A stretch of DNA of 64,000 nucleotides, from positions 1 to 64,000 of IMG/VR virus record IMGVR_UViG_3300019458_000021; one strand, 5' to 3'. The notes beneath the pieces were generated by a model. The model was not told where the DNA came from, made no database searches, and was given only the letters and a program-made list of their open reading frames with translations. Numbering within the stretch: the stretch's first letter is position 1; every line of letters begins with the position of its first letter. Of this stretch, positions 5,548 through 40,890 are shown in pieces. A program made the translations under genes and the position numbers.

Positions 5548-5570
5548 GGTGTCTTTTCCCCTGGATTTAG

Positions 5571-5674
5571 GGATATTTATAAATATCCACCAATCATCGT
5601 CAAAAGAAAACATTCAATGATTGGTGGATATTTATAAATATCCACCAATCATCGTCAAAAGAAAACATTCAATG
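5571..5674. repeat. Duplicated 49-nt unit containing an 18-bp palindrome (divergent late promoters); also a 27-bp inverted repeat
   Basis: GGATATTTATAAATATCC at 5571 and 5626; inverted repeat 5571-5597 / 5617-5643. Confidence 0.9.
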
Positions 5675-6503: not shown

Positions 6504-6575
6504 TGGCAAGGGCGTAGGGAATCGAACCCTATCCTATTTGCTTCAAAGGCAAAAGTAGCTCCAAGCCTCGCCCCA
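6504..6575 (-). tRNA. tRNA-Gln(TTG) with shortened D arm
   Basis: TTTGC-CTTTGAA-GCAAA, T arm, CCA; D arm GCT-TGG-AGC. Confidence 0.8.
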
Positions 6576-6586
6576 ATTACAACAGA

Positions 6587-6705
6587 GTTGATTGTCGGAA
6601 TAACTGTCTTACGACCGTTGTGTCTACCATTCCACCATAGAACTTACGTGCTAGAAGGACTCGAACCTTCACGTCTTTAGACGAAGTATGTCATTCCTAC
6701 GCAAC
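6587..6705 (-). ncRNA. Structured RNA motif copy A enclosing a permuted tRNA-Leu-like module
   Basis: GTTG-CGTA-GGAATGAC-ATACTTC ... GTTATTCC-GACAAT-CAAC; encloses variable arm, T arm, acceptor, then Leu-type D arm. Confidence 0.7.
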
Positions 6706-6708
6706 TGT

Positions 6709-6777
6709 TGGTCTCCCTACCAAGACTCGAACTTGGTCCGCAACGTCCCGAACGTTGTACGCTCACGCTCTAGGGAG
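6709..6777 (-). tRNA. tRNA-Pro(CGG) with truncated D loop
   Basis: CAACG-TTCGGGA-CGTTG; C1-G72, A73; close relative of Pro(TGG) at 12772. Confidence 0.8.
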
Positions 6778-6782
6778 ATTTA

Positions 6783-7019
6783 CTACTGATGCATTTGTTG
6801 CTGTTCCTGCCGAGCCTTTTCGATTGACTCGAGATGCTTGCGGATATATCGCATGAATAGCAGTGCTTTGTCCTCCGCAAGGAAGATAGCATTGCCGATA
6901 TCGTCAATAGGCACAGGAAACTGAAATCCAGTCTCCGTCTCGTACCACAATTCTCTTTCACGATAAAAAATGAACTTAACCTTTTTGTTGTCAACAACCA
7001 TTTCTTTCAATGTACTCAT
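6783..7019 (-). CDS. Hypothetical phage protein
   Basis: ORF track; RBS GGAG. Confidence 0.75.
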   Translation of the reverse strand: MSTLKEMVVDNKKVKFIFYRERELWYETETGFQFPVPIDDIGNAIFLAEDKALLFMRYIRKHLESIEKARQEQQQMHQ

Positions 7020-7033
7020 GTGCTTCTCCTTAG

Positions 7034-7131
7034 AGCGGACCGGGGAATTGAACCTAGCACTATAGATCTAGAATTTAAGTGCCCCATCTCCCGATTCACT
7101 GTCGGGCGTACTAACGTTGTACGAGGACCGC
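7034..7131 (-). tRNA. Atypical tRNA: Gly-like body, GTG anticodon, hairpin inserted in the T stem
   Basis: GCGGTCC/GGTCCGC-T; CCCGA-CAGTGAA-TCGGG; GCACT...AGTGC insert before GGTTCAATTCC. Confidence 0.6.
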
Positions 7132-7137
7132 ATTGTT

Positions 7138-7221
7138 TGGTTGCGGAGGTCAGGAGTCGAACCTGCTATCAGGTGGTTATGAGCCACCTATGGTCAATGA
7201 TATCCGTTCCACTTCTCCGCC
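7138..7221 (-). tRNA. tRNA-Met(CAT), initiator-like, enlarged D loop
   Basis: GGTGG-CTCATAA-CCACC; 1:72 mismatch; about 15-nt D loop. Confidence 0.8.
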
Positions 7222-7226
7222 ATTGA

Positions 7227-8510
7227 TTACTTGTGAAATTGCTCTTCTTCTGTTGAACCTTTCAAAGCCGTTGTCGAAGATTTACCTGATTGAATTACTT
7301 GAGTAACTTCATCGAAGTAACTTGTACCAACTTCACGTTGGTGTTTCACCGCCGTAAATCCTTTCTCAGCTGCTGCAAACTCCTTCTGTTGAAGTTCAAC
7401 AAAAGCAGTCATGTGATTCCTTGCATATCCATACGCTAGTTCAAACATCGAATAGTTCAGCGAATGAAAGCCAGCAAGAGTGATAAACTGAAACTTGTAT
7501 CCCATTGCGCCAAGCTCTCGTTGGAACATCGCGATTGTAGCATCGTCGAGATTTTTCTTCCAGTTGAACGATGGTGAACAGTTGTACGCTAATATCTTAT
7601 CGGGATATTTGCTATGAATCGCTTCCGCAAATCGTTTTGCAAACGTCAAATCTGGTTTGCCTGTTTCACACCAGATCAAGTCTGCATACGGTGCATATGC
7701 AAGCCCACGCGAAATAGCCTGATCGAGACCGTTGCGAACACAAAAAAATCCCTCTGAAGTTCTCTCGCCAGTCAAGAACGGTTTATCGTTTTCATCAATG
7801 TCACTGGTCAGTAAGTTTGCTGCTTCGGCGTCCGTTCGTGCAAATAGCACTGTTGGCACACCCATAATGTCAGCTGCTAATCTCGCAGCGACTAATTTCT
7901 CTACTGCTTCTTTTGTCGAGACAAGAACTTTACCACCCATGTGGCCACATTTTTTCACTGATGCGAGCTGATCTTCAAAATGAACACCAGCCGCACCTGC
8001 TTTAATCATTGCTTTCATTAGCTCATGTGCATTTAGCACACCACCAAATCCTGCTTCTGCATCTGCAACAATTGGAGCAAAATAATCGACTATGCGACAT
8101 CGGGGATCACCGTTGCTTTCCATGTGTTGGATTTGGTCTGCTCGTTGCAACGCATTGTTGATCCGTGTAACAACGGTTGGAACACTTGTGGCAGCATACA
8201 ACGATTGATCCGGATACATACTCAAACTGTCATTCGCATCAGCCGCAACCTGCCAACCCGACAGGTAAATCGCAGGCACGCCTGCTTTAACTTGCTGAAC
8301 TGCTTGATTGCCTGTTAGTGCACCAAGAGCATTGACGAATGGCCGCGTATGGAGAAGGCTCCACAACTTGTTTGCGCCTTGTCGCGCAAGAGTATGTTCA
8401 ACTTGGATAGACCCACTTAAACGATTAACGTCTTCAGCAGTATATGGTCGCGTTATCCCTTTCCATCTTGCATCTGTTTCCCACTCACGGTGCAATCGGT
8501 TGTCCATCAT
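7227..8510 (-). CDS. aceA: Isocitrate lyase
   Basis: Catalytic KKCGH motif, [18 protein letters not shown]-terminal GSTEEEQF; full length 427 aa. Confidence 0.98.
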
Positions 8511-11703: not shown

Positions 11704-11714
11704 AAAGAGCTTGA

Positions 11715-11809
11715 GTTATTGTGTACACGGAAGACGCTGGATTTGAACCAGCTATGTCTGATTTGTAGTCAGATTTTCAACCAATGAAGTAACCGTTGTA
11801 CTACGCAAC
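11715..11809 (-). ncRNA. Structured RNA motif copy B enclosing anticodon arm (ACA) and T arm
   Basis: GTTG-CGTA-GTACAACGG-TTACTTC ... CCGTGTAC-ACAA-TAAC. Confidence 0.7.
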
Positions 11810-11818
11810 AAGCTTCAG

Positions 11819-12771: not shown

Positions 12772-12846
12772 TGGTCTCCGTACAAGAACTTGAATCTTGT
12801 CCACAACGCCCCAAACGTTGTACGCTAACCCTCACGCTCTACGGAG
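12772..12846 (-). tRNA. tRNA-Pro(TGG)
   Basis: CAACG-TTTGGGG-CGTTG, C1-G72, CCA. Confidence 0.88.
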
Positions 12847-12946
12847 AAATTTGTAGCACGACAAAACCACCTCTGTGTGCGTGGCTGTGGGACGCTACTT
12901 TGTCTTATAAACGCTTGGCGGATGACTGTTAGGAACATCAATCGAG

Positions 12947-13092
12947 ATTAAACGTGCAGAGAACATGCGGTTTCCCGCTCGGGTTATGAGCCCGCTTGGC
13001 CCCACGGCCGATTCGCCACAAAAAACACCTCGATGCTCTTTGTGGCGAATTTTAGAGTCGAACTAAATGAAGTAACTCTACTACTGCGCAAC
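12947..13092 (-). ncRNA. Structured RNA motif copy C enclosing a circularly permuted tRNA-Met(CAT)
   Basis: T arm plus ATTCGCC precedes GGCGAAT plus D arm plus CGGG-CTCATAA-CCCG; closed by GTAGTAGAG/TTCTCTGC. Confidence 0.75.
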
Positions 13093-13095
13093 GAT

Positions 13096-13172
13096 TGGTC
13101 TTGGTGACAGGAGTCGAACCTGCGTGGTCTCCGCCCCAAACGGAGTGACTAACCAGACTAGCCTACACCAAG
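13096..13172 (-). tRNA. tRNA-Pro(TGG), second copy
   Basis: CTCCG...loop TT-TGG-GG; CTTGGTG/CACCAAG-A-CCA. Confidence 0.9.
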
Positions 13173-14291: not shown

Positions 14292-14302
14292 AATCAAGCT
14301 GA

Positions 14303-14377
14303 GTTAAGATCGCAGACAGCAACAAAGTTCCACCAGGATTCTAGGGCGAAAGTGAAGTAACTGTCTTACTGCGCAAC
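14303..14377 (-). ncRNA. Structured RNA motif copy D
   Basis: GTTG-CGCA-GTAAGACAG-TTACTTC ... CTGTCTGC-GATCT-TAAC. Confidence 0.7.
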
Positions 14378-14381
14378 AACT

Positions 14382-14468
14382 TGGTGCCCTTGACAGGAGT
14401 CGAACCTGCACCCACTTATGTGGCCGATGCTCTCAACGTCGTGCGTTTACCAATTACACCACAAGGGC
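14382..14468 (-). tRNA. tRNA-Leu(GAG), second copy
   Basis: Loop TT-GAG-AG, long variable arm, CCA. Confidence 0.88.
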
Positions 14469-40539: not shown

Positions 40540-40890
40540 AACACTGTGTGAAGCAGCTGCAAGGCGGACAAGACCCGAGTTCGAATCTCGGCATCTCCAC
40601 CAACACGGTTCGAATGATAAGTTGAGTCTAGGGCAGAGGTACAACAGTTGTGAGACACTGCCATTGTGAGAAATGCTAGCAAAGCTCACACACGAACCAC
40701 CTATGGGGGTGAATGGAATTGATTGACGTGCGAGTGGCCAGTGGACAGTGCGAGAGACGACTGACGTAATCAGCGTAAAACGTTAAACGCAAACGACTCT
40801 GCGTACAATGTTGAGGAACTCTACGGAGTAGCTGCTTAACAGCAGCCTTGCCTCGACCGAGCGTGACTGCTTGGGAACAGGAAACGTCAG
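40540..40890 (+). ncRNA. ssrA: Circularly permuted (two-piece) tmRNA
   Basis: Acceptor piece ending CCGAG-TTCGAAT-CTCGG-CATCTCC-ACCA (40602) precedes GGGGGTG (40705) with G3:U70; tag ANDSAYNVEELYGVAA* at 40789-40839. Confidence 0.92.

What the first reader, a model, noticed from the sequence alone, without database searches (positions are those of the whole stretch)
6587..6705. Second permuted tRNA (Leu-type) inside motif copy A, broken at a different position
Order: variable arm GTC-TAAA-GAC, T arm GAAGG-TTCGAGT-CCTTC, TAGCAC-GTAA-GTTCTA (acceptor closed by a GNRA loop, one mismatch), Leu-type D arm GTGGAATGGTAGACAC, then AACGG-TCGTAAGA-CAGTT (8-nt loop containing TAA) overlapping the P2 3' strand. 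A different breakpoint from copy C suggests repeated independent capture of tRNAs by the same scaffold.
Basis: partly seen in the sequence, partly recalled or inferred. Interest (0 to 1): 0.7.

Follow-up and report, generated by a model that had tools for sequence, protein, structure and literature searches.

The report
Phage Y RNA-like tRNA mimic
The "permuted tRNA" is real as a sequence pattern, but it is the tRNA-like domain of a Y RNA-like (YrlA-type) small RNA wedged between two tRNA genes of a giant phage; this class is known to partner Ro60 proteins, though here no Ro60 gene lies nearby.

Summary
On the minus strand of 6580-6710 the listed pieces are all present: a variable hairpin, a T arm, an acceptor-like stem closed by GUAA, and a Leu-type D arm.

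They sit inside a conserved scaffold: helix P1, GUUGCGYAG, helix P2, UACUUC, insert, P2, CUUUAACUC, P1. Models built only from other phages recover this locus. The scaffold model gives E 3e-6. The T/acceptor/D domain model gives E 1e-7, the best hit in the window.

P1 and P2 covary strongly across 34 distinct copies. In 10 other phages, 5 from metagenomes and 5 isolates including CcrColossus, copies lie next to a Ro60 (TROVE) gene on the same strand, mostly just upstream. Some of these also match Rfam YrlA.

The order V-T-acceptor-D is the published YrlA architecture. So this is a tRNA mimic, not a permuted tRNA gene.

- **Anticodon arm:** not supported. Its 3' strand is the P2 strand, and the closest relative has no such hairpin.
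- **Unusual features:** no Ro60 gene in the 237-kb contig or in four related contigs, a class II Leu-type module, and precise tRNA flanks.
- **Independent capture of tRNAs:** remains open.

The parts
6709..6777 (-). Upstream tRNA-Pro(CGG)-like gene with a short D loop, missed by ARAGORN and Rfam. Its CCA (6709-6711) overlaps P1 by 2 nt.
   Evidence: 79% identical over 62 nt to tRNA-Pro 12772-12846 (family D3). Sequence read.
6705..6710 (-). P1 5' strand, CAACAG.
   Evidence: R1 alignment. P1 covaries in 5 of 6 pairs across 34 distinct copies.
6698..6704 (-). 5' strand of the conserved internal loop, UUGCGUA. It is part of the family motif GUUGCGYAG, the likely Ro60-contact 'CGAA-type' motif.
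   Evidence: Invariant columns in A2/A3. The motif reads GCGAAG in copies next to Ro60 in L069. The CGAA / GNCGAAN0-1G motif is described in PMC4201824 and PMC12135203.
6690..6697 (-). P2 5' strand, GGAAUGAC.
   Evidence: R1 alignment with 8 of 8 pairs. All 8 P2 pairs show changes on both sides in the family.
6683..6689 (-). Conserved AUACUUC motif. It corresponds to the YUAY that opens the V region in YrlA.
   Evidence: Invariant TACTTC in A2/A3. YUAY is described in PMC4201824.
6673..6682 (-). Variable-arm hairpin GUC-UAAA-GAC, class II type. U at 6671 can form the A15:U48 Levitt pair.
   Evidence: Resembles the V arm of tRNA-Leu(UAA) of L025.
6654..6670 (-). T arm, GAAGG-UUCGAGU-CCUUC.
6638..6653 (-). 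Acceptor-like stem closed by a GUAA tetraloop (AS), 6 bp. The window's C.U mismatch at 6641 is C-G in both public runs.
6620..6637 (-). UG linker (U8 equivalent) and Leu-type D arm, GUGG-AAUGGUAGA-CAC.
6605..6619 (-). Linker after the D arm. It can form a 3-bp hairpin GUC-GUAA-GAC (6606-6615). Its AAG matches a recurrent family element just 5' of P2.
   Evidence: Constrained folds. Family listing.
6597..6604 (-). P2 3' strand, GUUAUUCC.
6586..6596 (-). 3' strand of the conserved internal loop, GACAAUCAACU (family consensus CGNCUUUAACUC).
6580..6585 (-). P1 3' strand, CUGUUG. A 4-nt spacer (6576-6579) follows, then the next tRNA.
6504..6575 (-). Downstream tRNA-Gln(UUG). Its RNase P site would set the 3' end of the Y-like RNA.
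14296..14382 (-). Sister copy 1 of the scaffold, with a short hairpin insert. It lies between tRNA-Leu(GAG) and a tRNA.
   Evidence: R1, 44.8 bits, E 2.3e-9.
12939..13097 (-). Sister copy 2, with a long insert. Found by motif and P1 pairing only.
   Evidence: Not found by R1 with default filters.
11708..11814 (-). Sister copy 3, whose insert is an anticodon arm plus a T arm in unpermuted topology.
   Evidence: R1, 38.9 bits, E 8.5e-8. Rfam tRNA partial match at 11736-11791.

Best explanation
Window 6580-6710 (minus strand) encodes a roughly 130-nt Y RNA-like non-coding RNA of the YrlA type.

**Structure.** Its two ends pair into a long stem, P1 (6 bp) and P2 (8 bp). Between them is a conserved asymmetric internal loop, GUUGCGUAG facing GACAAUCAACU. 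This matches the stem-bulge-stem, CGAA-type Ro60-binding module of Y RNAs. The far end of P2 opens into a tRNA mimic made of a class II-type variable hairpin, a T arm, an acceptor-like stem closed by a GNRA loop, and a Leu-type D arm. The nucleotides for the tRNA elbow and core are in place: U8, A14, A15:U48, G18G19, and U54-A58.

**How it would be made (inferred).** The RNA is transcribed as part of the phage's polycistronic tRNA array. 3' maturation of the upstream tRNA-Pro would free its 5' end, since that tRNA's CCA overlaps P1 by 2 nt. RNase P cleavage at the downstream tRNA-Gln, 4 nt after P1, would free its 3' end.

**What it would do (inferred).** It binds a Ro60/Rsr ring protein through the stem-loop module. 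That protein would be encoded in the unassembled third of the genome or supplied by the host. The tRNA-like module would then act as the effector or tether, or as a stabilising domain, as proposed for bacterial YrlA and for phage phiLo Yrl RNAs with PNPase.

**Shown here:** the sequence anatomy, family membership, covariation of P1/P2, and the family's association with phage Ro60 genes. **Inferred:** expression, processing, Ro60 binding and downstream function.
For: **Scaffold membership.** Model R1 was built from 7 minimal copies of other phages. It finds only three hits in the window on both strands: 14296-14382, 11708-11814, and 6580-6710 (33 bits, E 3e-6, full length, all 14 pairs formed). 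It finds none in the other 173 kb of the genome.

**Covariation.** Across 34 distinct copies, 92.6% of cells are paired against 58.7% in shuffles. The covariation score is 0.80 against 0.20, and about 0.1 when partners are slid. Thirteen of 14 pairs change on both sides.

**tRNA-like domain.** Model R2, built from 6 non-window sequences, gives 6619-6672 as the top hit (32.8 bits, E 1e-7). The 15:48 pair covaries in the subfamily, with 6 A:U and 2 G:C (sequences).

**Link to Ro60.**
- TROVE ORFs lie immediately downstream of the RNA copies, on the same strand, in G005, G006, G007 (100% complete), G008 and G010.
- R1 hits and sub-threshold Rfam YrlA hits flank the Ro60 genes of Caulobacter phage CcrColossus, Brevundimonas phage Kikimora, Rhizobium phage RHph_Y65, Xylella phage Usme and Arthrobacter phage Atuin.
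- Family copy L069:1396-1506 scores 47.7 bits against Rfam YrlA.

**Published architecture.** The order V-T-AS-D, the 5' CGAA-type motif and YUAY match PMC4201824. Phage Ro60 with upstream Yrl RNAs is described in PMC12135203.

**tRNA flanks.** A 4-nt spacer separates P1 from the next tRNA in window copies 1, 3 and A, and at two copies in phage Atuin.

**Closed acceptor stem.** The one mismatch in it is a C-G pair in both public runs.
Against: - Rfam YrlA scores only 12 bits on this locus (E 6.6 even in a 141-nt search), against a gathering score of 69.
- The loop motif here is CGUA, not CGAA.
- The D and T stems do not carry the near-invariant YrlA sequences.
- No TROVE or Ro60 homologue was found in the 237-kb contig (68% complete) or in four apparently related (shared tRNA-Leu-flanked copy type) contigs, G001-G004. 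No RtcB was found either.
- No RNA run was listed, so expression and RNA ends are unobserved.
- In a second cave metagenome run, a contig lacks 6672-6820. That removes the 5' half of this RNA and the tRNA-Pro-like gene, so the RNA may be dispensable.
- The A4 alignment was fitted to the model, which inflates pair counts somewhat.
Confidence: 0.65

Rival explanations
1. A true circularly permuted tRNA-Leu(UAA) gene. The transcript would be processed, for example through a circular or two-piece intermediate, into a decoding tRNA.
For: The pieces rejoined in normal order are called tRNA-Leu by ARAGORN. The D arm and V arm resemble phage tRNA-Leu genes. A UAA triplet lies in the loop after the D arm. 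M. smegmatis YrlA is cut by RNase P in its acceptor loop and receives CCA (PMC4201824).
Against: - The acceptor stem is 6 bp and closed by 4 nt, with no CCA or leader. RNase P cleavage of YrlA was seen only with a 7-bp stem.
- The anticodon stem has at most 4 pairs and an 8-nt loop. Its 3' strand is the conserved P2 strand. The fold is about 4 kcal/mol worse.
- The most similar relative lacks the hairpin.
- The same scaffold occurs without any tRNA part, and next to Ro60 genes.
Confidence: 0.04
2. A Ro60-independent tRNA mimic. In this Ro60-less phage clade the RNA would act on tRNA-binding factors directly. It could be a decoy for host tRNA-targeting defence nucleases or for modification and processing enzymes, or a structured spacer that organises RNase P and 3' processing of the tRNA array.
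For: No Ro60 gene was found in G000-G004, although their Y-like RNAs and tRNA arrays are assembled. All copies are confined to the tRNA array and abut tRNAs with fixed spacing. The tRNA core nucleotides are retained.
Against: The stem-loop motif that accompanies Ro60 genes in ten other phages is fully conserved here, which argues that the same partner is still used. The contigs are incomplete, and hosts may supply Rsr. There is no direct evidence for any decoy activity.
Confidence: 0.2
3. A decaying, non-functional relic of tRNA gene rearrangement in a recombination-prone tRNA array.
For: It has one of the lower R1 scores in the family. A 149-bp deletion removes its 5' half in run X2. The neighbouring tRNA-like genes are aberrant.
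Against: All 14 scaffold pairs and the T, AS and D stems are intact. The tertiary-interaction nucleotides are kept. The only stem mismatch is a proper pair in the sequenced populations.
Confidence: 0.1

Closest known systems
YrlA (Y RNA-like A; Rfam RF02553) of bacteria and phages (Chen et al. 2014, PMC4201824)
   Same: A 5'/3' stem carries a CGAA-type motif and YUAY, followed by V, T arm, closed acceptor-like stem (AS) and D arm in that order. The tRNA tertiary nucleotides are present, including 15:48 covariation. Family relatives lie upstream of Ro60 on the same strand.
   Different: - Only 12 bits against the Rfam model.
- The motif is CGUA rather than CGAA.
- Both strands of the internal loop are conserved (GUUGCGYAG / CUUUAACUC).
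- The D and T stems are not the YrlA invariants but Leu-type, with a class II V hairpin.
- An extra GNRA mini-hairpin follows the D arm.
- No Ro60 gene lies within 4 kb or anywhere in the contig.
- The RNA is embedded between tRNA genes.
Yrl1/Yrl2 of Thermus phage phiLo, with phage Ro60 (PMC12135203)
   Same: Phage-encoded Y RNA-like genes with a stem-bulge-stem and a CGAA-type bulge, in several copies.
   Different: The phiLo RNAs lie directly upstream of the phage Ro60 gene, and model R1 does not detect them. No tRNA-array context is reported for them.
Deinococcus radiodurans Yrn1
   Same: A Ro60-binding stem with both strands conserved, plus a tRNA-like part. Yrn1's topology, with an anticodon-arm-like hairpin between the arms, resembles window copy 3 (11708-11814).
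   Different: Copy A has the YrlA topology, not the Yrn1 one. No sequence similarity was tested.
Circularly permuted tRNA genes of Cyanidioschyzon merolae and some algae and archaea (from my own knowledge)
   Same: The 3' half (T arm, acceptor 3' strand) lies upstream of the 5' half (acceptor 5' strand, D arm).
   Different: Those genes have an intact anticodon arm formed at the junction. A processable linker lies between the acceptor ends, and they yield mature tRNAs. Here the acceptor is closed by a tetraloop and the junction is a long protein-binding stem.
Two-piece (permuted) tmRNA
   Same: A permuted tRNA-like domain. One is encoded in this same window at 40542-40839.
   Different: No tag reading frame or pseudoknots, and no Rfam tmRNA match at the locus.

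Membership tests
Phage Y RNA-like scaffold family defined here (model R1) | P1 (6 bp) and P2 (8 bp) flank the conserved loop strands GUUGCGYAG and CGNCUUUAACUC, with UACUUC after P2. | tested here: met
   R1 was built without window sequences. It scores 33 bits, E 3e-6, full length, with 14 of 14 pairs formed. Family covariation is shown.
YrlA / bacterial Y RNA (RF02553) | tRNA-like domain in the order V, T arm, closed acceptor-like stem, D arm, with tRNA tertiary nucleotides. | tested here: met
   R2 scores 32.8 bits, E 1e-7. U8, A14, A15:U48, G18G19 and U54-A58 were read from the sequence. The defining order is from PMC4201824.
YrlA / bacterial Y RNA (RF02553) | Score at or above the Rfam gathering threshold (69 bits). 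| tested here: not met
   12 bits, E 6.6. Even copies next to Ro60 genes reach only 31-50 bits.
YrlA / bacterial Y RNA (RF02553) | 5' Ro60-contact motif GNCGAAN0-1G (CGAA). | tested here: inconclusive
   Copy A has UUGCGUAGG (CGUA). Family copies beside Ro60 read GCGAAGG or GCGCAGG at the same position.
YrlA / bacterial Y RNA (RF02553) | Encoded within about 4 kb of a Ro60 (TROVE) gene, on the same strand. | tested here: not met
   No TROVE match in G000. The feature is met by family relatives in 5 IMG/VR contigs and 5 isolated phages.
YrlA / bacterial Y RNA (RF02553) | Bound by Ro60/Rsr in vivo. | not testable with these tools
   The complex prediction was not run for a protein-RNA pair.
Permuted tRNA gene | An intact anticodon stem-loop (5 bp, 7-nt loop) formed across the permutation junction. 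| tested here: not met
   At best 4 pairs with an 8-nt loop, sharing 3 nt with P2. The fold is 4.2 kcal/mol worse than the family fold.
Permuted tRNA gene | A processable linker between the acceptor 3' and 5' ends, and a mature tRNA product. | not testable with these tools
   The linker is a 4-nt GUAA loop on a 6-bp stem. No RNA run was listed.
Two-piece tmRNA | Match to a tmRNA model, with a tag reading frame. | tested here: not met
   No tmRNA hit at 6575-6715.

The most novel reading that the evidence does not exclude
The Ro60-type stem-loop may be a modular platform that has repeatedly taken up pieces of resident phage tRNA genes. Examples are the class II Leu module here and in L025, Asp/Glu/Gly-like and canonical YrlA-like modules elsewhere, and unpermuted anticodon-plus-T-arm modules in copy 3. 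A clade of jumbo phages without their own Ro60 would then deploy these 'orphan' Y RNAs, cut out by the tRNA processing machinery, to capture host Rsr/PNPase or to decoy tRNA-directed host defences.
Probability: 0.2. Interest if true: 0.7.

Novelty: new variant of a known kind. Interest (0 to 1): 0.42.

Why it matters
**For annotation.** Apparent "permuted tRNAs" in phage tRNA arrays should be read as Y RNA-like tRNA mimics. Current tools miss them: Rfam gives 12 bits and ARAGORN gives nothing.

**For Y RNA biology.** The results give a scaffold model that finds several unannotated Y-like RNAs around the Ro60 genes of cultured phages (CcrColossus, Kikimora, RHph_Y65, Usme, Atuin). They show that both strands of the putative Ro60-binding loop are conserved in phages. 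They also suggest a simple biogenesis route, excision by tRNA-end processing. And they point to phages that carry Y-like RNAs without a Ro60 gene, which raises the question of whether phages exploit host Ro60.

**Open and testable.** Whether the tRNA modules are swapped with resident tRNA genes bears on how tRNA mimics evolve.

Tried and rejected
- **HDV-like 'theta' or other self-cleaving ribozymes downstream of tRNAs.** I considered this because the motif starts right after CCA. The topology, two nested helices with no double pseudoknot, does not fit, and Rfam gave no match.
- **GOLLD, ROOL and Drum RNAs (tRNA-associated phage RNAs).** No Rfam hits.
- **First IMG/VR pattern scan.** It returned 65 loci, most of them chance matches in coding DNA. 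Only about 12 were genuine.
- **First permissive motif script.** It gave mostly false positives and was tightened.
- **MAFFT alignment of whole tRNA-like copies.** It was poor, so separate scaffold and domain models were built.
- **Copy 2 (12939-13097).** R1 with default filters does not recover it.
- **TROVE and RtcB searches in G000.** Both negative.
- **Ro60-RNA complex prediction.** Not run by the tool, so it is not evidence either way.
- **Two review papers.** Not held in the library.
- **Test of module similarity to co-resident tRNAs.** Not significant.
- **RNA runs.** None was listed.

Full report
**Context**

The window is the first 64 kb of a 237-kb IMG/VR virus record. It is linear and estimated 68% complete. 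It comes from a cave metagenome.

The first 23 kb carry about 30 tRNA genes, all on the minus strand. A permuted tmRNA lies at 40542-40839. The finding lies in this array, between a tRNA-Pro(CGG)-like gene (6709-6777) and tRNA-Gln(UUG) (6504-6575). ARAGORN misses the tRNA-Pro-like gene because its D loop is short. It is a paralogue of 12772-12846.

Read on the minus strand, 6580-6710 contains, in this order:
- CAACAG (P1)
- UUGCGUA
- GGAAUGAC (P2)
- AUACUUC
- hairpin GUC-UAAA-GAC
- GU
- T arm GAAGG-UUCGAGU-CCUUC
- hairpin UAGCAC-GUAA-GUUCUA
- UG
- D arm GUGG-AAUGGUAGA-CAC
- 15-nt linker AACGGUCGUAAGACA
- GUUAUUCC (P2')
- GACAAUCAACU
- CUGUUG (P1')

When the pieces are rejoined in normal order, ARAGORN calls a class II tRNA-Leu. 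The D arm is closest to the phage's own tRNA-Leu(GAG). In both public DNA runs, position 6641 reads C on the plus strand. This turns the only mismatch of the closed acceptor stem into a C-G pair.

**The scaffold is a real, repeated RNA structure**

- The same frame occurs four times in the genome, all in the tRNA array. It also occurs in about a dozen IMG/VR contigs.
- I built covariance model R1 from seven minimal copies of other phages, using P1 and P2 only. It finds three hits in the whole window: 14296-14382, 11708-11814 and 6580-6710. The last scores 33 bits, E 3e-6, with all 14 pairs formed.
- R1 finds nothing in the remaining 173 kb of the genome.
- Over 34 distinct copies, 92.6% of cells pair, against 58.7% in shuffles. 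The covariation score is 0.80 against 0.20, and about 0.1 with slid partners. Thirteen of 14 pairs change on both sides. One caveat applies: that alignment was fitted to the model.

**What the scaffold is**

- In five IMG/VR contigs that carry the motif, a TROVE-domain (Ro60) ORF of about 500 aa follows the RNA copies directly on the same strand. These are G005, G006, G007 (100% complete), G008 and G010. G005 has six tandem copies ending 45 nt before the ORF.
- Around the Ro60 genes of five of eight cultured phages examined, R1 gives 12 hits, all on the Ro60 strand. These phages are CcrColossus, Kikimora, RHph_Y65, Usme and Atuin. The R1 hits are interleaved with tRNAs and with sub-threshold Rfam YrlA hits of 31-50 bits. 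Most lie in the unannotated gap just upstream of the Ro60 gene. In Atuin, two of the three lie downstream of it.
- Family copy L069:1396-1506 matches Rfam YrlA at 47.7 bits.
- Published YrlA RNAs have a 5' CGAA-type motif and YUAY, then V, T, a closed acceptor-like stem (AS) and D. They lie within 4 kb of Ro60 on the same strand, including in phages (PMC4201824). Phage phiLo Ro60 binds two upstream Yrl RNAs with a CGAA bulge (PMC12135203).

So the scaffold is the Y RNA stem-bulge-stem module, and the 'permuted tRNA' is the YrlA-type tRNA mimic.

**Copy A as a member**

- Domain model R2 covers the T arm, a 7-bp closed stem and the D-arm sequence. It was built from six non-window copies. It puts 6619-6672 first in the window, at 32.8 bits and E 1e-7.
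- The core nucleotides are in place. In the subfamily the 15:48 pair is A:U in six copies, including copy A, and G:C in two (sequences). Chen et al. reported the same covariation.
- Direct similarity to Rfam YrlA is weak: 12 bits, though full length and in register. Membership in the Rfam family as defined therefore fails. Homology is bridged by the phage family.

**The 'anticodon arm'**

- Its 3' strand (CAGUU) shares GUU with P2', which is conserved and covarying.
- With P1, T, AS and D fixed, the best fold keeps the 8-bp P2 and leaves a 3-bp GUC-GUAA-GAC hairpin, at -32.0 kcal/mol.
- The AAG within 'UAAG' coincides with an AAG element that recurs 2-3 nt before P2' in many copies that have no tRNA part.
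- The most similar relative is L025:2341-2486. It has a Leu-type D arm, a UG linker, a GNRA-closed 7-bp stem, the same T loop, and one compensatory T-stem change. It has no such hairpin.
- The stretch may be a relic of a tRNA-Leu(UAA) anticodon arm, since the V arm and D arm align with a phage tRNA-Leu(UAA). It is not a conserved functional arm.

**Likely biogenesis (inferred)**

P1 starts within the CCA of the upstream tRNA in copies 1, 2 and A. Exactly 4 nt separate P1' from position +1 of the next tRNA in copies 1, 3 and A. The same spacing occurs at two copies in Arthrobacter phage Atuin. The tRNA-end processing enzymes would therefore release the RNA.

**What is unusual**

- No Ro60 homologue was found in this contig, or in four other contigs (G001-G004) that carry the same scaffold in tRNA arrays and look related to it (shared tRNA-Leu-flanked copy type). 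These are 35-68% complete. Either the gene lies in the unassembled parts, or this clade relies on a host Rsr, or the RNAs work without Ro60.
- Modules differ among copies. There are Leu-type, canonical YrlA-type and Asp/Glu/Gly-like D arms, as well as unpermuted anticodon-plus-T modules and plain hairpins. This is compatible with module exchange.
- The nearest-tRNA test is not significant. The top match was a co-resident tRNA in 2 of 8 cases, with 28-35% expected by chance.

**Population data**

A contig in run X2 lacks 6672-6820. That stretch covers the 5' half of copy A, the tRNA-Pro-like gene and the last codons of the small ORF. The RNA may therefore be dispensable. No RNA run was listed, so expression is untested.

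**Verdict**

The best explanation is a YrlA-type Y RNA-like tRNA mimic embedded in a jumbo-phage tRNA array. It is a new variant of a known kind, and of moderate interest.

Noticed in passing
window 7030-7135 (-): A tRNA-like gene missed by ARAGORN and Rfam. It has an acceptor stem with one mismatch, a D arm and an anticodon arm (loop CAGUGAA). Its T stem (GGGG/CCCC) encloses a 37-nt insert that holds GGUUCAAUU.
   Followed up: partly
window 7142-7220 (-): A tRNA(CAU) with a long D loop. It scores 27.9 bits, just under the Rfam tRNA threshold, and ARAGORN does not call it.
   Followed up: no
window 6709-6777 (-): A tRNA-Pro(CGG)-like paralogue of 12772-12846 with a shortened D loop. Neither tRNA finder detects it.
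   Followed up: partly
window 6672-6820: A contig in cave-metagenome run X2 lacks these 149 bases exactly. This removes the tRNA-Pro-like gene, the 5' half of the Y-like RNA and the end of the small ORF.
   Followed up: partly
window 6783-7019 (-): A 78-aa ORF of phrog_20427, function unknown. Homologues lie beside a Y-like RNA copy in L018 and in Ralstonia jumbo phage RsoM2USA.
   Followed up: partly
window 7227-8510 (-): A full-length isocitrate lyase gene (Pfam ICL, E 1.7e-106) inside the phage tRNA array.
   Followed up: no
window 40542-40839 (+): A permuted (two-piece) tmRNA gene, 97 bits. Brevundimonas phage Kikimora also has one, about 2 kb downstream of its Ro60 gene.
   Followed up: no
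window 12939-13097 (-): Scaffold copy 2 carries a long insert with a weak tmRNA-like piece (13011-13067, 17 bits). Model R1 misses it.
   Followed up: no
window 11708-11814 (-); L026:9300-9403; L037:1776-1911: Scaffold copies whose insert is an anticodon arm plus a T arm in normal order. This is a second, Yrn1-like topology of tRNA mimicry on the same scaffold.
   Followed up: partly
L080, L083, L084, L085, L087 (CcrColossus, Kikimora, RHph_Y65, Usme, Atuin): Unannotated gaps around the Ro60 genes of these cultured phages each hold two to three scaffold (R1) hits, plus one to three separate sub-threshold YrlA hits (in Atuin the single YrlA hit lies inside an R1 hit), often interleaved with tRNAs.
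   Followed up: partly
window 5564-5673: Two tandem 55-nt repeats (95% identical), each containing a palindrome GGATATTTATAAATATCC. They lie at the divergent junction of two ORFs.
   Followed up: no
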